A stretch of DNA of 64,000 bases from Octopus bimaculoides (Eukaryota), in NCBI RefSeq assembly GCF_001194135.2, contig NC_069003.1:35965191-36029190 (forward strand), written 5' to 3'. Every line of letters starts with the position of its first letter. The stretch's first letter is position 1. Below, piece by piece: positions 2,496 through 60,328 of this stretch. The translations under genes and the position numbers were made by a program. The notes under the pieces are model-generated. The model was not told where the DNA came from. It saw only the letters and a list, made by a program, of their open reading frames with translations, and made no database searches.

Positions 2496-4836
2496 CTATC
2501 CCCAGTCTTCAGACAATTAGACTACCTTTTCTCGATGCCAATTTTGAAGAATTTTTAGTTCTTGAGATTACCTTCTCTTTCCATTTTGAGTTAGTCCAGC
2601 CTCCCTTGAAGCGGAGATACTTTCAATATTTCAATAGTTTATATTGTACGTTATTTAATATACCCTCATTCGTATAAATAAAATTTAAATAAAAAACATA
2701 CAGACTTTTTGCGTAAGTTTTAAGTAGTTAGGTATTTCAGGTGATTGCTCAATGCCATCAGAACACCTGGCAGAGAAGCATGCTAATGGACTTTCCAATC
2801 CGATACACACATCTATCATGGTGTGAGAAAGTTATCATGTTTTTTGACGTCATTATAATGAAGGAAATAGACGATAAGAAGATGGTATTGGGGCACTGTT
2901 AGTGCTTATCGTAACAATACTGACTTAGCATTCAGGGGTTGAGTGGCTGGATATATTGCGATTGCATAAGTATATTCAATATTCTAAAGTGCTTCGTTGA
3001 AAGTGTGTGGAATCATCTGTATTATGTCCATAACCCATAGCCTCAGCTAATATTTTGGCCTTGTATGTGTATAGTTGGTCCTGCATCAGAGTGTCCGAAT
3101 ATCTCCATAAATTTTATGCATCAATGCCAATACTTATATACTTACGTATGCATAACTATGTGCGTGCGTGCGTGCGTGCGTGCGTGCGTGTGTGTGCGTG
3201 CGTGCGTGTGCGTGTATTTACGTATATGCTTGAAACTACTTTATCTAAAAGAATCCAGTTCTCAAGATAAAAAGAATGAAGTTTTATCTGACTGTTTCAC
3301 GAACTCATAAACATCGTTATTTTTATTGTATATGAATGCGTTACTGTTATTGTATATGAATGTGTTTAAAATGGATGTAAAAGTCTGTTGTTTGTCTAAG
3401 GAGAATAGTTACTACAGAGAACAGTCCAAAGGTCAAATTAGAAATAGCTTCAAAGACATTACTCTGAGCATATTGACCCGTCCTATAAAGTGGACTTTAT
3501 TACAATGACCACTCATTTCTCCAGTGGATATTTGTGTCTTTCTACACACACACACACACACACACACTGAGAGACTCTTCGTCCACCAAACATTTTGTCA
3601 TCCTCCCTTTTGGTCAAGCTATTAATCTGCCTGAAACTGCCTCTGGTTCTTCGATACAAACTTCATAATCTATAGTGATCTAGATTAAATTTCACGTTAA
3701 TTTAAATTCTTAACACGAACTTAGTAGTCACGAAGATATTTAACTAAATTCTTCATTTTCAAAATTTATTGCAGCAAAGGGACAGTATTTCAACAATAAT
3801 GTGATAACAGGGTTAAACCGACCCTCCACTTCCGTAAAACGTTCGCTGTTTGAAGGAATGAAAAGGCCACCAGAAATATCGACATTTTTCGATAAGGATC
3901 ATGAACAAAAAGAAAACAAATGGCCATTCTTCTAGCAAGTGCACAGTCATTTAGGAAAGCTGCAATCTCTGACCCACCATCAACACCAACAATAAAAAGT
4001 TTTTTTCAAGTTCTGCGGTGCTCGAAATGTGAGGACGCATACAGACCTGCAGGCACTGATGCTCTTCTTCTTCTTCTTCTTCTTCGGCCACGAGTGGACG
4101 GCCGTGATATGTCGTAATATACGTTCGTATGCATGTATGCTTATATACGGGCTTATATGCGTGTATGTATGCACGGTCATACATTTTTGTTTTTTATTCA
4201 AGTCTTCGCAGAGTCCAAACCGTTTACTAACAGAGAGGCATTTTTTTATCATTTGAAACAAGACAATTCCATGTTATTTGTGAATAAGTGAGTGAATGGA
4301 TGTACATATATGTAGTAGATATATGTGTAGATATCATTTCACTCATATACTGGGTGTACATGGTTTTTCAAGTATCGATGTGAGATTGCTCATGTGTGTG
4401 TATATCATACACACATATATGCCTGTGAGTATATGGTCATTCCAGGAAAGACAAATAGAAAATATTTGGAATGTTCTACAAATCGATTGGATTTGAAGGA
4501 GGTCTGTTTTCTTTGAAGTTTCATGAGAAACCTCACCATTCTCAGGCTTTTAAAACAAATAAATCTGTTGTTACAAAGCGCATTCTATCCGCATTTGGTC
4601 ATTATTCTATTTTTCCTCAACTTTAACCGAGTCATTCACATCTGCTAGGTTCCTGAAGCATATAACAATGCATGTCTTGTTTCATATTACATGGAATATC
4701 AGATCTGTTGTGCTTTAACCGGATTGCTGTTTCTATTACAATATTCCAAAGGTATTTCTTATTTTTAAATATGTGAATACATTTTTGTTTTGATGTGACT
4801 TTAGTGTGGCTATCAGGATATTCCTCCTAACCCTAA

Positions 4837-5116
4837 CTCATGGACACAAGCAACGATTTCTTTACCGAATCGTTACTGGCGACGAAAAATGGTGCCTGTA
4901 CATCAATATGAAGCAGCGTAAGGAATGGCTTAGCCCCGGTAAACAAGCGACAAGTCGAAATACCAACGAGTTATTGAAAATCTTGTTGAACGATGGGAAG
5001 AAGTTGTAAACAACAAGGGTGAATACATTATTGATTAATTAGTTGTTATTTTTTATTAAACCTTTTAAAAAATTTTAATTTTAAAAAACGGCGGGAACTT
5101 AGTTGCCAACCCAATA
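4837..5116 (+). mobile_element. Mariner transposon remnant, 5'-truncated and internally deleted
   Basis: Encodes RFLYRIVTGDEKWCLYINMKQRKEWLSPG (first catalytic D motif), then jumps to the C-terminal ENLVERWEEVVNNKGEYIID* in another frame. Ends in a TIR-like ttagttgccaacccaa plus TA at 5115-5116. Confidence 0.9.
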
Positions 5117-11767: not shown

Positions 11768-12716
11768 NNNNNNNNNNNNNNNNNNNNNNNNNNNNNNNNN
11801 NNNNNNNNNNNNNNNNNNNNNNNNNNNNNNNNNNNNNNNNNNNNNNNNNNNNNNNNNNNNNNNNNNNNNNNNNNNNNNNNNNNNNNNNNNNNNNNNNNNN
11901 NNNNNNNNNNNNNNNNNNNNNNNNNNNNNNNNNNNNNNNNNNNNNNNNNNNNNNNNNNNNNNNNNNNNNNNNNNNNNNNNNNNNNNNNNNNNNNNNNNNN
12001 NNNNNNNNNNNNNNNNNNNNNNNNNNNNNNNNNNNNNNNNNNNNNNNNNNNNNNNNNNNNNNNNNNNNNNNNNNNNNNNNNNNNNNNNNNNNNNNNNNNN
12101 NNNNNNNNNNNNNNNNNNNNNNNNNNNNNNNNNNNNNNNNNNNNNNNNNNNNNNNNNNNNNNNNNNNNNNNNNNNNNNNNNNNNNNNNNNNNNNNNNNNN
12201 NNNNNNNNNNNNNNNNNNNNNNNNNNNNNNNNNNNNNNNNNNNNNNNNNNNNNNNNNNNNNNNNNNNNNNNNNNNNNNNNNNNNNNNNNNNNNNNNNNNN
12301 NNNNNNNNNNNNNNNNNNNNNNNNNNNNNNNNNNNNNNNNNNNNNNNNNNNNNNNNNNNNNNNNNNNNNNNNNNNNNNNNNNNNNNNNNNNNNNNNNNNN
12401 NNNNNNNNNNNNNNNNNNNNNNNNNNNNNNNNNNNNNNNNNNNNNNNNNNNNNNNNNNNNNNNNNNNNNNNNNNNNNNNNNNNNNNNNNNNNNNNNNNNN
12501 NNNNNNNNNNNNNNNNNNNNNNNNNNNNNNNNNNNNNNNNNNNNNNNNNNNNNNNNNNNNNNNNNNNNNNNNNNNNNNNNNNNNNNNNNNNNNNNNNNNN
12601 NNNNNNNNNNNNNNNNNNNNNNNNNNNNNNNNNNNNNNNNNNNNNNNNNNNNNNNNNNNNNNNNNNNNNNNNNNNNNNNNNNNNNNNNNNNNNNNNNNNN
12701 NNNNNNNNNNNNNNNN
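11768..12716. other. Assembly gap (949 N)
   Basis: N-run. Other gaps lie at 13415-13459, 14976-14985, 21652-21701, 24055-24070, 30361-30553, 32387-32497, 43083-43092, 47048-47265 and 55213-55335, and most abut simple repeats. Confidence 1.
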
Positions 12717-12808
12717 TGTGTGTGTGTGTGTGTGGTGCGCGCATGCGTGTGTCACTGGAACTATCTGAGCTCTACGTTTGTATTGAATACTCTTCCAGAT
12801 CTTTACCC

Positions 12809-12859
<51 letters not shown>

Positions 12860-13043
12860 GGCGGCGAAGCTGGCAGAATCGTTAGCACGCCAGGCGCAAT
12901 GATTAGCGGCATTTCGTATGTCTGCACGTTCTAAGTTCAAATTCCGCCGAGGTCGACTTTGCCTTCCATCCTTTTGGGGCCGATGTAATCGACTAGCCCC
13001 TTCCCCCAAAAATCTTAAGGCCTTGCGCCTGTAGTAAAAAGAA
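12860..13043 (+). mobile_element. SINE family A with internal deletion and (ATT)n tail
   Basis: A-box-like tggcagaatcg and B box aagttcaaattcc are present. The ~37-bp segment between the two internal ggggtcgat-like repeats is missing. Confidence 0.9.
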
Positions 13044-13366
13044 TTATTATTATTATTATTATTATTGCTGTTGTTGTTATTATTATCGTTGTTGCTGTTT
13101 TTCCTTATATTTAATAATTGCTTTAAAAAAGTATTGTTTGCGTATTATTTTGTGTACATAACAGAGGCACACTACTGTCTATTTGTACACACATATATAT
13201 GTTTACATATCCATATGTAAATGTTTGTATTAATACATACATATGTGCCTGTGTGCATATACCTCCATGATTGCTGTTGACATCAGGTATCCGAATACTG
13301 TGGACCGGCTTTAAACAGCATACTACAAGATGTCTACTCTAATATAAAATTATTACACATATATGT

Positions 13367-13414
<48 letters not shown>

Positions 13415-13471
13415 NNNNNNNNNNNNNNNNNNNNNNNNNNNNNNNNNNNNNNNNNNNNNGTGTATGTGTGT

Positions 13472-21643: not shown

Positions 21644-21701
21644 ATATACCCNNNNNNNNNNNNNNNNNNNNNNNNNNNNNNNNNNNNNNNNNNNNNNNNN
21701 N

Positions 21702-23625: not shown

Positions 23626-24165
23626 CAACAATAAATATAATAGAAGATATATATTTTGTAAGCATTTGAGAGAGGGAGAATACCGAGTGACTTTTATGTA
23701 GGTCAAAAGTAAGCAGGACAACGACGAAATTACGCCAACTCTATAAATTATTGTACTATATAAGAAATGTGTTAATTATTCCATTTTTAATCAGAACACC
23801 TGGAATTATGACTCATTCCTTCTGTAAAGACGTTAGCTCGTTACCTTTTGGTATAAGCACGGACATGTACAAGAAAGTTGTCATACTATGTCCAGTTGAT
23901 ATTGGTAGACCATTCCTTAAAAGCAGTTGTTAAACATGAACAGTTAAGTGAATACCTGTCTAGATTTATATCGTTTGAGTCATTAAGAAAAGAAAATTTT
24001 GGCTGAAGTAGCTGATTATGGTTCCTAACCCAAGCAGAAAGTCAATATATTGGCNNNNNNNNNNNNNNNNGGGGGGGGGGGGGTATCATGAAAAAAACTA
24101 CAACCAAATATTTTATTTTATTTTTCAACCCTTTAAAAACTGAAAGTCGATCTGGGTGAGATTGG

Positions 24166-24717: not shown

Positions 24718-26029
24718 TGAGAGTAACAATTACAATAGCAGCATTAACAACAAGCGAAGTACCATTAACTTTTCTGTTTGTATTTCAAAAAGAAAAGAAC
24801 CTATAATCCTAGATACATAAAGGCTTAAAAAGGCGGAATGGTCGCAACTGGAACGCCTTTTATTATAGCTGGTCGGTAAGAGCTGAGCTCGATTTAAACA
24901 ACAACAGCAGGAACCTAGATAATATTGACAACAGCAACAACAAATTGCTTTCGTTGAGTGAAGTCTCCAACTCTACTCAGTGTCAAATGAAAGGTACTCG
25001 GCAAATTCTCTCTCCTCTACAAGCCACGTTCAAACCACCCGGAATCGGTTTTACTTTTCAACGTTCTCAGGGTTAAACAACAACAACAACGACGGCAGCA
25101 ACTATTTTCTGTCTTCTATGCCGAACTCAGAATTACTCGTGGTGCACGAGTCACTGAGGAAGCTCCTACACGGTAACTCGACCTGCTAGAAATAGCAACA
25201 TCTTTAAGTATTAATAGAGAATTTATACATGGTTGAATGCGAAAAGAGCTTTGTTGTTGTTGTTGTTGTTGCTGCTGCTGCTACCGCTGCCTCCCCAGTA
25301 TTGCAATACATGTTGAAATAAGAGAATGGTTTTCGACTTGAATTGAGATTTGAAATTTCTGGAGAGAAGTTGGCCTTGGGGAATGTGCCTGGGGTAAATT
25401 TGGTAGAGCAATTGGCATCCCATCTGGGATTTGGTTTCACATCGAAAACTTTGTTTCTTTGGAACCACAAGAACTTAAAACACCACGATGTCACTTGAAT
25501 GTTTAATGTGTGATGTGACTTTGTAAAGTGATATTCTGAGAGACATGGTAAGCAAATACTGTGACCTGGTTTCGATTCCCCATTGAAACAGATTCACTTG
25601 TTACTTTAAGAGGACATTTTTCCAAAATGAAACCATGGCAGTATAAATGCCACCTTCTGAGATTCATAAAATATACTGGCTTGTTTTTATTTTTATTTCA
25701 TTTCTGGTAGAATTGGCAGGAAGTCAGCTTGTCAGTGAGTACCAGTTAATTTCGCTCACTGTGATAGATATAAATATAAATATATTACAAGCGTCGATCT
25801 TGCTGCTGCTGCTGCTGCTGTTATGGTGAATGTACTGGTGATGACAATGATGGCAGTGATGATGTTGGTTTTAATTTACTCTACTCATCGAAGTTGCTGC
25901 TGCTGTTGTTTTCGTTGTCACTGCCGTTGCAGTTGTAAACTGTTTCACGAAGCAATCACAAATGAATTATTGAGGAGTAATAATGTTTAGTGACGTAACA
26001 GTTTTAAGATCGGTAATAGATTGGATTCA

Positions 26030-26213
26030 GATTTTGGCACAAGGCCAGCAATTTCTGGGAGAGGGTAAATCGATTGCATCGACCCCAGTGCTCAACCGGT
26101 TCTTATTTCATCGACTCCGAGAGGATGAAAGGCAGTGTCAACCCCGACAGCATTTGAACTCAGAGCGTTGGCATTTTGTCCGACGCGGTAACGATTCTGC
26201 CAGCTCGCCACCT
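26030..26213 (-). mobile_element. SINE family A, near full length
   Basis: Reverse complement of the head (acgattctgccagctcgcc) and tail (ggcacaaggccagcaattt) of the family. Confidence 0.9.
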
Positions 26214-27224
26214 TAGATTTGTGATATATTGCAGTTATTATAGCCATGGTTTGTTTTATGATCAAATGGGCCCCAGACGTGACCATGCCAGCATATTTCA
26301 TTCATTTTGAAGAAATATACAGATTTACTTAGTAAAGTCTAGCCACAAAATTGCCCAGTAAATAACATTGCCAACGCCACAAGAGATTCTGCTTTGGAGG
26401 AAATTGCTAAAACATGAAGCATGGCCAAAAACAATAACATCTTACACGAGGCGTGAAGTAGCATCTTCGGAACAATATGTGAAATGAGTTGGGGATACAA
26501 ACAACTAAAACAAAGTCACAGCAAGATTTGAGAACTTCACTTTTTACATCAATAGAAGAATGATTCAGGCACAACTCAATATAATTAGAAAAACTCTTCA
26601 TTTAACATTACCACCAATTCATTAAAGAGCTAATGAACACCGAGCACAAACTGGAGATTGCAAATATTGGACGCTGAGTGTCTTACTCTTATTGTGTGAT
26701 CATCTACCTTACCATAGATGACACTTTGTTATTTTCTTAATCTAATCAAGATACAGTGTAACTAGAGGAGATTTGAAAGCTCTTTACTTTAATGCAACAA
26801 AAAAAAAATGCAGTATCAAAGATGATTAACTTCCAAGAATCTGCAGCTAAAGAAGTATCAGAAAAAGACTTGATTACCTGCAGCTGGTATAAAAAGACTA
26901 AATTTTTACTGGCGATATTCTATCAAGCTCTACCAGCAACCATCAGACGGGTGATCTGCATGCTAACTTGGATGGCATTTAGCAGAAACGATTCTGCTAT
27001 GTAAGTATAAAATCACTTGCATAGCGATAAACTAATAAAACTAGCTACTAATTAATTGCATGACAGGACAAGCGTATAATGTAACAAGATTACGACTCGC
27101 GTCGAAACGGATGAAAAGCGAAACGTTTAGAAATGTTGTTAGAAAAACCTAATCATGTAAAAATGTAAATAATGTACATAATTCCTCATCTCTTGAATAG
27201 AGAACTGTATGATAAAGATCACTT

Positions 27225-54485: not shown

Positions 54486-54615
54486 AGACAGGGAGCTGAC
54501 AGAATCGTTAGCGCATCGAATAAATGCTTACTGACATTTCTTCTGGCTCTTTATGTTCTGAGTTCAAATCCCGTCGAGGCCAACTTTGCATTTCCTCGCT
54601 TCTGGACTGATAAAA
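54486..54615 (+). mobile_element. SINE family A, 5' part
   Basis: gagctgacagaatcgttagcg...tatgttctgagttcaaatcccgtcgaggccaactttgc. Confidence 0.85.
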
Positions 54616-55181: not shown

Positions 55182-55212
<31 letters not shown>

Positions 55213-55342
55213 NNNNNNNNNNNNNNNNNNNNNNNNNNNNNNNNNNNNNNNNNNNNNNNNNNNNNNNNNNNNNNNNNNNNNNNNNNNNNNNNNNNNNNNN
55301 NNNNNNNNNNNNNNNNNNNNNNNNNNNNNNNNNNNATATATA

Positions 55343-55557
55343 TTGTTGTACTTGGGGATGGTCATATTGCCAGTTTAGCCAATAAAAACACACGCACTGT
55401 ATATTTGGTGTTAATTTGCTTCAGCTTTATATTACATTAATCTTAATCTTATTTCGGCCAGAGTTCTTTCGTCACACTTCTGTGACCTCATCAGTGGTCC
55501 TTTGTTTCCTTCCTTCTTATGTGTGTCTCACCTTGCTAAATATCAGCCATTTTCGGA
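55343..55557 (-). mobile_element. ~215-bp (TA)n-embedded cassette carrying a hammerhead motif (Penelope-like pseudo-LTR or retrozyme-like unit)
   Basis: Bounded by (TA)n on both sides and contains the hammerhead at 55456-55500. The element class is an inference. Confidence 0.6.
55456..55500 (-). ncRNA. Minimal type I hammerhead ribozyme motif
   Basis: Minus strand GGACCA-CTGATGA-G-GTCACA-GAAG-TGTGAC-GAAA-GAAC-TC-TGGCC: intact CUGANGA and GAAA cores, perfect 6-bp stem II, CUC triplet, and a 5-bp stem I with one bulged A. Confidence 0.8.
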
Positions 55558-55589
<32 letters not shown>

Positions 55590-56279
55590 ACATATATATA
55601 CATGTATGTATGTATGAATGTATGTATGTATAGTCTCAGGTTATGAATGAGTTCTCTCTCTAGTTATAAAGTACTTAAATTATACATATACGTTATGAGC
55701 ATTTGTGAGTACAAATTTATTTCTAACACTATTCCAGGAATTTAGGACTGTAACGGATTATGTGTCTCTTATTGAAAGTTCTTTTTTTTTCCTTCCGTGA
55801 AGAAAACTCTATATAGACAGATTCCATCGACTTACATGTACATGAAACTGGATCTCGTTCCAATGTCAAAAATTCGTAAATTCTATAAATTGAAGTTTCT
55901 CATATAATGAAAAAAAAGTTTTATCTCCGCCACATGTTTACTGATCCACTGCTGCTGATTATTATTTCTAAAGATGAAAACAAGTTGTTGAAGAATACCT
56001 CTAAGAATATTTTTCAATTCTTTTCTTGTAACTTTTTATTATAAAGAATATTTACAGGCGACACCAGGCGACCAACAACAAGGAAAACAGAAGAAAAAAT
56101 ACTTAGAAAAATGGTATACCGAAGAAAATGAACCATTCAACAAAACCATCCTCGAATCGATTACATATCAAAGTAAGGTCCTTCCCACACCTCTGCATGC
56201 ATCGTAATCCCAACGACGCTGCCCACGGAGATGGAGATGCTTCGAAGAATGAAGATATGGAGGAGGGAGTTTTATCAAA

Positions 56280-56902: not shown

Positions 56903-57070
56903 GCACTAAGCACAAGGCGTGAAATTTGGTGGGGAGGGGGAGAAGTCTAGTCGATTACATCGACCCCAGAGTTCAACTGGTGCTTATTTCATCGACCCCG
57001 AAAGATGATAAAGGCGACATTTGCGGAATTTGAACTCAGAACATACGGACAAAAGAAATGTTGTTAAGCA
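56903..57070 (-). mobile_element. SINE family A
   Basis: gcacaaggcgtgaaattt...gtcgattacatcgaccccag...ggaatttgaactcagaac. Confidence 0.85.
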
Positions 57071-58746: not shown

Positions 58747-58820
<74 letters not shown>

Positions 58821-59036
58821 GGCAGCGAGCTGGCAGAAACGTTAGCCTGCCGGGCAAAATGCTTAGCGGCATTTCGTCTGTCTTTACGTTCTGAGTTCAA
58901 ATTCCGCCGAGGTTGACTTTGCCTTTCATCCTTTTGGAGTCGATAAAATAAGTACCAGTTGAGCACCGGAGTCGAGGTAATCGACTTACCCCTTCCACCC
59001 GTATTTGCTGGTCTTGTGCCAACATTTGGAACCAAA
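58821..59036 (+). mobile_element. SINE family A, best-preserved copy
   Basis: A-box-like tggcagaaacg and B box gagttcaaattcc in a tRNA-like head, with complete body and tail. Confidence 0.92.
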
Positions 59037-60328
59037 ATTAATACACATTAATCCTGTTTCGATCTCTTCCGCACCATTTAAAAAAGAAAACATGACTACC
59101 CTCATTAAGCACTAATTCTATTTCATGAAAAGATATTCGACTCCATTCTTTTATCCTGCTCAGCAAAACCTTACCCAGTGCAATGTGCATATCTTTCTTA
59201 CCTTTCTATAATTAAGATCTTATCAGAGCAGGTTTACAATATCATCAGCCGAAGGAGTGTCTTCACAAAACAGCCAAAATATTTCTGAATGTTTCCATAG
59301 AATTATAAATATATAAAAAAGAAAAACAGCAATCTTTGATGGAATGTCGTCTATCAAAGGAAATACAATAAGAATGCTATTCTCGTGTTTAATAGGAAAC
59401 AAAAGATGAATGTTGCCGGGGAGGATCAGCTGGTGCAAGACTCACGTCTTCAGTAAACGCTACCCTCAGCTGCTTTATATGGGAGAGCCTACAACTGTCT
59501 TGATTATAGGTTTTCATTCATTAAAATATTCCTCAGTACAGTTAGTTACAGATTAAACAAAAATCAGTGTTGGGTCCTTCTATTTGGTGTAGGAACAATT
59601 TTTCAAGGTTTCGTCTTTAGTGAATTTACAAAAGTCGAAGCTATGTCTTGAAGGAAAGAAACTATTTCGTTCCCATTTTAGCATGTTGGACAACAGTTTA
59701 AAACTTCCTTCATCGGACTGTGTTGCTGATATTTTGCCAAACAAAATTCTGATGTGAAAAACACTAAATATCAACGGATCGTTATGAATAAGTATATACC
59801 TTGATAATCATCTGTCTGTCTGTTTGTCTGGCTGTCTCTCCCCCACACACAGACATACTTTCATCCACCCACACACAAATATAGGAAGAATAAACAGTCT
59901 TGGGATAAAGATTGCTGTAATCAATTCTCATTCCAAGGGATAAGTTTTTATGCTGAAGCAGGAAGTGGTTATCAAGTATCTCATAAGACACAGAGATATA
60001 AGATGATCGTGTGAGAAAATACTATAGACCACATGGGGAGGAAAGACGCTAATCATGTTATGTAATGTTCTCGACAAGTTCAGTTCTTCAACAATATCTT
60101 CATCTGAGCTATTGGATATATTTCTCAAATGTAGATATATATACTCGTTTCACAAGAAAGCTGTATTAGTTGAAAATTTATTTTATGTTCCATCAAATTC
60201 AAGCGAAACAGGCGCACGTTTTCTAAGGGACGTTAGAAAAGAAACAGCCGCTCTATTGTGGAATTCAGGTTGCTCATTCGACACATACTAGACATCAGAC
60301 ATTTTGATGTTTCTCTCGAACTCCGCTC

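What the first reader, a model, noticed from the sequence alone, without database searches (positions are those of the whole stretch)
55343..55557. Near-intact minimal hammerhead ribozyme inside a ~215-bp cassette bounded by (TA)n
Seen in the sequence: minus-strand 55500->55456 reads GGACCA CTGATGA G GTCACA GAAG TGTGAC GAAA GAAC TC TGGCC. Both catalytic core strands are intact, with one extra G before a perfect 6-bp stem II. A CUC triplet puts the predicted cleavage site between 55461 and 55460, and stem I pairs over 5 bp with a bulged A. Stem III is only A-U plus G-C around a 2-nt loop. The cassette is flanked by (TA)n on both sides and has no coding capacity. Established knowledge: minimal type I hammerheads with vestigial stem III occur in Penelope-like element pseudo-LTRs and often cleave as dimers, and tandem hammerhead units in animals (non-LTR retrozymes) yield small circular RNAs. 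Inference: this may be one unit of a non-autonomous, microsatellite-targeting, self-cleaving retroelement family in this genome. The adjacent gap (55213-55335) could hide a second unit.
Basis: partly seen in the sequence, partly recalled or inferred. Interest (0 to 1): 0.85.

Follow-up and report, generated by a model that had tools for sequence, protein, structure and literature searches.

The report
Lone Penelope-type minimal hammerhead ribozyme relic
The hammerhead ribozyme motif is really there and is very unlikely to be chance, but it looks like a solitary, probably inactive leftover of a Penelope-like retrotransposon in a (TA)n microsatellite, a kind of element already known in thousands of copies in animal genomes.

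Summary
Minus strand 55500->55456 reads GGACCA-CUGAUGA-G-GUCACA-GAAG-UGUGAC-GAAA-GAAC-UC|UGGCC, inside 215 bp of unique sequence between two (TA)n tracts.

- **Not chance.** A strict descriptor matched 1 of 1500 shuffled windows. A version carrying the published class hallmarks matched 0 of 4,000,000 simulated core sites.
- **The "extra G" is not a defect.** A nucleotide between A9 and G10.1, a G10.1-C11.1 pair, a long helix II, a short helix I and a vestigial helix III define the minimal hammerheads of Penelope-like elements (PLEs) (Cervera & De la Pena 2014).
- **Rfam finds no hammerhead.** Its models are built on canonical hammerheads, and the papers read here find minimal ones with structure descriptors.

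(TA)n is a published preferred PLE target. The 118 nt from cut site to 3' boundary fits the PLE studied in vitro.

Most likely this is a severely 5'-truncated PLE insertion, or solo pseudo-LTR fragment. It is alone: no second hammerhead, no tandem unit, and no RT or GIY-YIG ORF in 64 kb. Its helix III segment AGAACU cannot self-pair, so dimer-dependent cleavage is probably lost.

Copy number and covariation could not be tested, because no collection held this genome. The retrozyme/circular-RNA reading and the idea that the gap hides a second unit are unsupported. This is a new member of a known kind, of low interest.

The parts
55343..55557 (-). 215-bp unique cassette. Proposed to be a severely 5'-truncated Penelope-like-element insertion or solo pseudo-LTR fragment: 57 nt upstream of the hammerhead, the 45-nt hammerhead, and 113 nt downstream.
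   Evidence: No other copy in the window.
55456..55500 (-). Type I minimal hammerhead ribozyme motif of the PLE 'min-HHR' architecture.
   Evidence: Chance estimates. The local minimum-free-energy fold forms exactly helices I and II and leaves the core unpaired.
55495..55500 (-). Helix I, 5' strand GGACCA (the A at 55498 is bulged).
55488..55494 (-). Catalytic core strand C3-A9, CUGAUGA.
55487..55487 (-). Unpaired G between A9 and G10.1. This is a hallmark of PLE minimal hammerheads.
   Evidence: Literature: PMC4209133.
55471..55486 (-). Helix II (GUCACA/UGUGAC, 6 bp, opening with G10.1-C11.1) and loop 2 GAAG.
55467..55470 (-). Core strand G12 A13 A14 A15.1 (GAAA).
55461..55466 (-). Vestigial helix III and cleavage triplet: G15.2, AA, C16.2, U16.1, C17. 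Predicted scission is 3' of C17, between 55461 and 55460. The segment AGAACU is not self-complementary.
   Evidence: Duplex energies: +1.4 kcal/mol as observed, against -5.0 (AGAUCU) and -4.8 (AGUACU) for palindromic versions.
55456..55460 (-). Helix I, 3' strand UGGCC.
55186..55342 (.). (TA)n tract interrupted by the 123-N assembly gap (55213-55335). Proposed target microsatellite at the 3' junction of the insertion.
55558..55631 (.). (TA)10 followed by (TATG)n and related repeats. Proposed target microsatellite at the 5' junction of the insertion.

Best explanation
The cassette is a dead, severely 5'-truncated copy (or solo pseudo-LTR fragment) of a Penelope-like retrotransposon. It was probably inserted into a (TA)n microsatellite by the element's GIY-YIG endonuclease and reverse transcriptase.

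It carries the element's minimal type I hammerhead ribozyme. In the parent element, two such hammerheads on tandem or pseudo-LTR transcripts pair through their helix III segments. That forms an active dimer, which cuts 3' of C17 (here between 55461 and 55460) and trims multimeric transcripts to unit length.

At this locus the motif is alone, and its helix III segment (AGAACU) has lost self-complementarity. It most likely does not cleave and has no host function.

- **Shown:** the motif, its class-specific architecture, its improbability by chance, its solitude in 64 kb, and the (TA)n flanks.
- **Inferred:** PLE origin, insertion mechanism, dimer mechanism and present inactivity.
For: **1. The motif is exact and improbable by chance.**
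- The strict descriptor matched 1 of 1500 shuffles.
- Monte Carlo gives 2.7e-4 strict matches per window.

**2.
- One nucleotide between A9 and 10.1.
- A G10.1-C11.1 pair.
- A long helix II (6 bp) and a short helix I (5 bp).
- Complementary 15.2/16.2 positions and a vestigial helix III.
- With these features added, 0 of 4,000,000 simulated core sites matched.

**3. The solitary state is the published norm.** The same paper reports that most such motifs occur as single copies, probably from truncated PLEs.

**4. The flanks fit.**
- (TA)n is a published preferred PLE target (PMC8557442).
- Only about 3% of this window lies in short TA-bracketed intervals.

**5. The geometry fits the Anolis PLE studied in vitro** (PMC11167929).
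- Stem II start to cut site is 26 nt in both.
- There, genomic 3' ends lie at +111-118 from the stem II start, with an optional 30-40 bp tail. Here the 3' boundary is at +144, which is 118 nt past the cut.

**6. The RNA folds as expected.** The local minimum-free-energy fold gives helices I and II with an open core, and the fold persists in the 215-nt context.
Against: - No homologous copy could be retrieved, so family membership, covariation and linkage to an RT/GIY-YIG ORF are untested.
- No RT or endonuclease domain appears in any ORF piece of >=60 aa in the window.
- Rfam gives no hammerhead hit.
- Loop 3 (AA) is not palindromic, unlike the class consensus.
- Microsatellites are so dense here that the (TA)n flanks could be coincidental.
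- The host taxon, and so its PLE load, is unverified.
Confidence: 0.65

Rival explanations
1. The cassette is a monomer of a short non-autonomous hammerhead-bearing retroelement: a non-LTR retrozyme, or a PLE pseudo-LTR-derived element mobilised in trans by PLE proteins. Elsewhere in the genome it would form tandem arrays, self-cleave and give small circular RNAs.
For: - The unit size of 215 bp and the low GC content fit the 170-400 bp retrozyme range (PMC7229834).
- A 2026 preprint derives non-LTR retrozymes from PLE pseudo-LTRs. It finds solo monomers dispersed along chromosomes.
- That preprint's pipeline accepts minimal hammerheads as well as canonical ones.
Against: - No tandem unit and no second hammerhead in 64 kb.
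- The hammerhead has the PLE minimal architecture, not the canonical helix I/loop 1 - helix II/loop 2 type described for invertebrate retrozymes.
- There is no Rfam Hammerhead_1 hit.
- The 215-nt RNA is not unusually structured (z = +1.0).
- The gap is a microsatellite assembly break of 123 N, too small for a unit.
Confidence: 0.17
2. The motif is a chance match in ordinary unique intergenic DNA lying between two independent microsatellites. It has no ribozyme ancestry.
For: - The motif is short. Scaling the rate to an assumed genome of about 2.7 Gb (about 42,000 windows), the strict descriptor expects about 10 chance matches per genome.
- There is no Rfam hit, no homologue and no nearby PLE ORF.
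- Loop 3 is not palindromic.
- The first-stage scan may have covered many windows.
Against: - With the independent literature hallmarks added, 0 of 4,000,000 simulated sites matched. On the same assumed genome size that gives an upper bound of about 0.3 expected matches per genome.
- The motif coincides with a TA-bracketed interval, which has about 3% prior probability.
- The geometry matches a characterised PLE.
Confidence: 0.13
3. It is a host-domesticated cis-acting hammerhead, for example in an intron or UTR, that regulates a nearby transcript.
For: Domesticated hammerheads exist in amniote introns and mammalian 3' UTRs (established knowledge).
Against: - No gene or exon was recognisable in the window.
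- There are no HH9, HH10 or other Rfam hits.
- Helix III cannot form in cis or in trans.
Confidence: 0.03

Closest known systems
Minimal hammerhead ribozymes (min-HHRs) in the pseudo-LTRs of metazoan Penelope-like elements (Cervera & De la Pena 2014, PMC4209133)
   Same: - Type I topology with an intact CUGAUGA/GAAA/UH core.
- One unpaired nucleotide between A9 and G10.1.
- A G10.1-C11.1 pair.
- A long helix II (6 bp) and a short helix I (5 bp).
- Complementary 15.2/16.2 positions and a 2-nt loop 3.
- Found as a solitary copy, as most are.
   Different: - Loop 3 is AA rather than palindromic, so the dimeric helix III is predicted unstable.
- No flanking RT/GIY-YIG ORF and no second pseudo-LTR.
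- No family consensus is available for this genome.
Hammerhead of the Anolis carolinensis Poseidon element PAc (Frangieh et al. 2024, PMC11167929)
   Same: - It has stems I and II and loop II but no stem III.
- Stem II start to cut site is 26 nt in both.
- The hammerhead sits roughly 90-130 nt from the 3' end of genomic copies. Here it is 118 nt.
   Different: - In PAc the ORF starts at stem II. Here the frame from the core AUG closes after 20 codons.
- There is no sequence similarity evidence.
- PAc hammerhead cleavage was dispensable for insertion in vitro.
Non-LTR retrozymes of animals (Cervera & de la Pena 2020, PMC7229834; Li et al. 2026 preprint)
   Same: - Short AT-rich units of about 170-400 bp carrying a type I hammerhead with a weak helix III.
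- Dimer-dependent cleavage.
- Solo monomers exist.
- Derived from PLE pseudo-LTRs.
   Different: - No tandem array here.
- The hammerhead is not of the canonical loop-loop type.
- The RNA is not notably structured.
- Circular RNA was not testable.
Rfam Hammerhead_1 (RF00163), the classical type I hammerheads of Schistosoma, newt and cricket satellite repeats
   Same: The same catalytic core and type I topology.
   Different: It does not reach even E<=10 against the Rfam models. By my reading of the motif, it lacks helix III and the conserved loops 1 and 2, and it has an insertion after A9.

Membership tests
PLE minimal hammerhead (min-HHR) | Intact catalytic core: CUGAUGA, GAAA and a UH cleavage site in type I order | tested here: met
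   The cleavage triplet is CUC.
PLE minimal hammerhead (min-HHR) | One unpaired nucleotide between A9 and 10.1 | tested here: met
   G at 55487. Criterion from PMC4209133.
PLE minimal hammerhead (min-HHR) | Conserved G10.1-C11.1 pair opening a long helix II (6-8 bp) | tested here: met
   G55486-C55471, 6 Watson-Crick pairs.
PLE minimal hammerhead (min-HHR) | [quoted passage not shown] | tested here: met
   5 bp with one bulged A.
PLE minimal hammerhead (min-HHR) | Palindromic 15.2/16.2 and loop 3, allowing a dimeric helix III | tested here: inconclusive
   G15.2/C16.2 are complementary, but loop 3 is AA. The AGAACU self-duplex is +1.4 kcal/mol, against -5.0 and -4.8 for palindromic versions. 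This is consistent with a single decay mutation, but that is not shown.
PLE minimal hammerhead (min-HHR) | Lies in a pseudo-LTR next to an RT + GIY-YIG ORF, or belongs to a genomic consensus family with covariation | not testable with these tools
   There is no RT or endonuclease domain in the window, as expected for the solitary majority. No collection held this genome.
PLE minimal hammerhead (min-HHR) | Self-cleavage, weak and dimer-dependent in vitro | not testable with these tools
   Needs transcription assays.
Non-LTR retrozyme | At least two consecutive head-to-tail units, each with a complete hammerhead | tested here: not met
   Single copy of the cassette, no tandem period of about 200-400 bp, no second hammerhead. 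The criterion is stated.
Non-LTR retrozyme | Canonical type I hammerhead (helix I about 6 bp with loop 1, helix II about 4 bp with loop 2) | tested here: not met
   The architecture is minimal-type. No Rfam Hammerhead_1 hit.
Non-LTR retrozyme | Expressed as linear and circular unit-length RNA | not testable with these tools
   No transcriptome access.
Rfam Hammerhead_1 (RF00163) | Covariance-model score at or above the gathering threshold | tested here: not met
   No hit at the gathering score, nor at E<=10 on 305-nt and 68-nt slices, nor window-wide at E<=0.05.

The most novel reading that the evidence does not exclude
The cassette is a founding example of an undescribed family of about 215-bp non-autonomous, PLE-derived hammerhead elements in this (possibly cephalopod) genome. 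Such a family would home to (TA)n microsatellites, form tandem arrays elsewhere and produce self-cleaved circular RNAs.
Probability: 0.12. Interest if true: 0.45.

Novelty: new member of a known kind. Interest (0 to 1): 0.25.

Why it matters
If correct, this is one more solitary Penelope-type minimal hammerhead, a class already reported in thousands of copies per genome across animals. Its value is for annotation. It marks a PLE-derived insertion that standard tools miss: Rfam gives nothing and there is no ORF. It also illustrates PLE insertion into (TA)n. It could serve as a seed for cataloguing hammerhead-bearing PLE fragments in this genome. It does not open a new question unless a genome-wide search shows a tandem, expressed, non-autonomous family.

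Tried and rejected
- **Rfam 15 covariance models.** Tried on the whole window at the gathering score, on the whole window at E<=0.05, and on 305-nt and 68-nt slices at E<=10. There was no hammerhead hit, only microsatellite-driven pseudo-miRNA matches. I rejected this as a refutation because minimal hammerheads lack helix III and the papers read here search for them with descriptors.
- **Copies in the window.** blastn of the cassette, a 3-mismatch pattern search, repeat finding and a relaxed hammerhead scan found none.
- **Copies elsewhere.**
  - A pattern scan of metagenome contigs gave 7 hits. All lacked helix II and the number is close to chance expectation.
  - Viral contigs gave 0 hits.
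  - Protein-database searches with the + strand ORF and with the minus-strand frame downstream of the core AUG found nothing.
  - Exact-product look-ups of two window ORFs found nothing.
- **PLE ORF in the window.** Pfam on all ORF pieces of >=60 aa found only a mariner transposase.
- **Supplementary sequence sets.** None is held for the two key PLE papers, so no independent covariance model of minimal hammerheads could be built.
- **Identifying the organism.** A search with a SINE-derived peptide gave a single hit, in a run labelled as a mealybug, so the taxon stays unverified.
- **Rod-like circular-RNA structure.** Rejected, since the 215-nt fold has z = +1.0.

Full report
**Observation**

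The minus strand 55500->55456 reads GGACCA CUGAUGA G GUCACA GAAG UGUGAC GAAA GAAC UC UGGCC.

- Helix II is six Watson-Crick pairs.
- Helix I is five pairs with one bulged A.
- The cleavage triplet is CUC, which puts scission between 55461 and 55460.
- The surrounding unique sequence is 55343-55557 (215 bp).
- On one side it meets ATATATA, a 123-N gap and (TA)13. On the other it meets (TA)10 followed by (TATG)n.

**Is it more than chance?**

- A hammerhead descriptor of my own finds only this site on either strand of the window. That holds when one core mismatch is allowed.
- In 1500 dinucleotide-preserving shuffles, a loose descriptor (helix II >=4 bp, helix I >=4 bp) hit 2.4% of shuffled windows. 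The strict one (>=6 bp and >=5 bp) hit 1 of 1500.
- A Markov Monte Carlo conditioned on the CUGAUGA core gives 2.7e-4 strict matches per window. For an assumed genome of about 2.7 Gb (about 42,000 windows) that is about ten per genome.
- I then added four features taken from the literature rather than from this sequence: one nucleotide between A9 and 10.1, G10.1-C11.1, complementary 15.2/16.2, and helix III region <=4 nt. With these, 0 of 4,000,000 simulated core sites matched.

**The covariance-model test**

Rfam 15 gives no hammerhead hit in any setting I tried. These were the whole window at the gathering score, the whole window at E<=0.05, and 305-nt and 68-nt slices at E<=10. The only matches are microsatellite-driven pseudo-miRNA hits.

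I do not accept it as such.

- This class lacks helix III and, by my reading, the conserved loops that the canonical models rely on.
- Cervera & De la Pena 2014 and Li et al. 2026 both searched with RNAmotif or rnabob structure descriptors, using minimal type I models.
- Canonical hammerheads do reach the Rfam model in a cephalopod: 235 Hammerhead_1 hits were reported in the giant squid genome. So the miss here says the motif is not of the canonical type, not that it is not a hammerhead.

**What class it belongs to**

Cervera & De la Pena (PMC4209133) describe the minimal hammerheads of metazoan Penelope-like elements (PLEs).

- They have a larger than usual helix II and a shorter helix I (4-5 bp).
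- They have a highly conserved G10.1-C11.1 pair.
- Positions 15.2/16.2 are palindromic, as is loop 3 when present.
- Helix III is too weak to act in a monomer.
- Most copies are solitary and attributed to truncated PLEs.
- A single motif showed no cleavage in vitro. Dimers and trimers cleaved weakly.

The window motif has every one of these features except a palindromic loop 3.

The paper on animal retrozymes separates these atypical minimal variants of PLEs and Terminons from the canonical type I hammerheads of tandem non-LTR retrozymes.

**Context**

- *Target site.* PLEs insert preferentially into microsatellites, and (TA)n is named as a preferred target (PMC8557442). The flanks therefore fit. 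The evidence is modest, because this window has a microsatellite about every kb (75 TRF rows). Short TA-bracketed intervals make up about 3% of it.
- *Geometry.* In the Anolis Poseidon element studied in vitro (PMC11167929) the cut site is 26 nt after the start of stem II. Reverse transcription, and hence the 3' end of genomic copies, starts 111-118 nt after that point, with an optional 30-40 bp tail. Here stem II start to cut is also 26 nt, and the 3' boundary lies at +144, which is 118 nt past the cut. That is what a copy truncated at its 5' end to its last 215 nt would look like.
- *The gap.* It has TA repeats on both sides, and 8 of 10 gaps in the window abut microsatellites or homopolymers. 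It is an assembly break in (TA)n and is too short for a second unit.

**Solitude**

- No second copy of the cassette.
- No tandem period near 200-400 bp.
- No second hammerhead.
- No RT or GIY-YIG domain in any ORF piece of >=60 aa in the window. The only Pfam hit is a mariner transposase remnant.

**Folding and likely activity**

- The local minimum-free-energy structure is exactly helices I and II with the core open (-12.3 kcal/mol, z = -1.6). It persists in the 215-nt context.
- The whole unit is no more stable than shuffles (z = +1.0). That does not favour a compact circular-RNA element.
- A 2-bp helix III closed by two nucleotides cannot form in cis.
- In trans, AGAACU against itself leaves two A.A mismatches. 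The duplex energy is +1.4 kcal/mol, against -5.0 for AGAUCU and -4.8 for AGUACU.
- I infer that this copy is one substitution away from a dimer-competent hammerhead and is probably inactive now.

**What could not be done**

No collection available to me holds this genome.

- The metagenome pattern scan gave seven hits without helix II, about the number expected by chance.
- Viral contigs gave none.
- Searching the protein database with frames that cross the cassette found nothing.
- Exact-product look-ups found nothing.
- Supplementary sequence sets of the key PLE papers are not held.

So copy number, family consensus, covariation and linkage to a PLE ORF remain untested. That is the main weakness of the conclusion.

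The host is also unverified. The window is about 36% GC, very rich in microsatellites, and carries several copies of a SINE-like repeat. From memory I associate that repeat with octopus genomes. The only database relative of the repeat sits in a sequencing run labelled as a mealybug. If the host is an octopus, PLEs are an established and recently active part of its repeat content: 31 families and 336 recent insertions in O. vulgaris.

**Verdict**

| Reading | Probability |
|---|---|
| Genuine Penelope-type minimal hammerhead in a severely 5'-truncated PLE insertion or solo pseudo-LTR fragment within a (TA)n microsatellite; solitary and probably catalytically dead | about 0.65 |
| Monomer of a non-autonomous, pseudo-LTR-derived retrozyme family | about 0.17 |
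| Chance match | about 0.13 |
| Domesticated host ribozyme | about 0.03 |

This is a new member of a known kind, and the interest is low (0.25). The most novel reading not excluded is a (TA)n-homing, circular-RNA-producing, non-autonomous family in this lineage. I give it about 0.12 probability and moderate interest if true.

Noticed in passing
window 25970-26215 (+), 12800-13145 (-), 58820-59050 (-), 37075-37300 (-); fragments at 54552-54573 and 57024-57045: There are several diverged copies of a roughly 200-bp SINE-like repeat, each usually ending in a microsatellite. Two oppositely oriented fragments lie about 1-1.5 kb either side of the hammerhead cassette. From memory it resembles an abundant octopus SINE. 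The only database relative lies on a Logan contig from run SRR16213284, which a paper lists as the mealybug Planococcus ficus. In the stretch where the two align well, about four in five bases are identical by eye. That could be contamination of the run or a wider distribution of the SINE, so the host taxon of the window is unverified.
   Followed up: partly
window 44419-44679 (+); also 44163-44280 (+) and 4794-5006 (+): A mariner-type transposase remnant matches Pfam Transposase_1 at E = 2.9e-21. Just upstream is a hairpin with a sub-threshold Rfam match to MIR7504 (67 bits against a gathering score of 83). I suspect it belongs to the same transposon. A second, weaker mariner-like peptide lies at 4794-5006.
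   Followed up: partly
whole window; gaps at 11768-12716, 13415-13459, 21652-21701, 24055-24070, 30361-30553, 32387-32497, 43083-43092, 47048-47265, 55213-55335: Microsatellite density is extreme (75 TRF rows in 64 kb). Eight of ten N gaps abut a microsatellite or homopolymer, so the gaps are repeat-induced assembly breaks. The repeats also produce dozens of spurious sub-threshold Rfam miRNA matches such as mir-297, mir-466 and mir-3149.
   Followed up: yes
window 45306-45492: A 43-bp tandem repeat of about 4.5 copies at 67% match lies just downstream of the mariner remnant. Its nature is unknown.
   Followed up: no
window 55384-55392 with 55521-55529, and 55373-55378 with 55535-55540 (minus-strand RNA): In the 215-nt fold, the hammerhead is enclosed by a long-range pairing: GAGACACAC with GUGUGUUUU, and UUUAGC with GCUAAA. 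It could be a distal closing stem of the element RNA or a coincidence. The overall fold is not more stable than shuffles.
   Followed up: no
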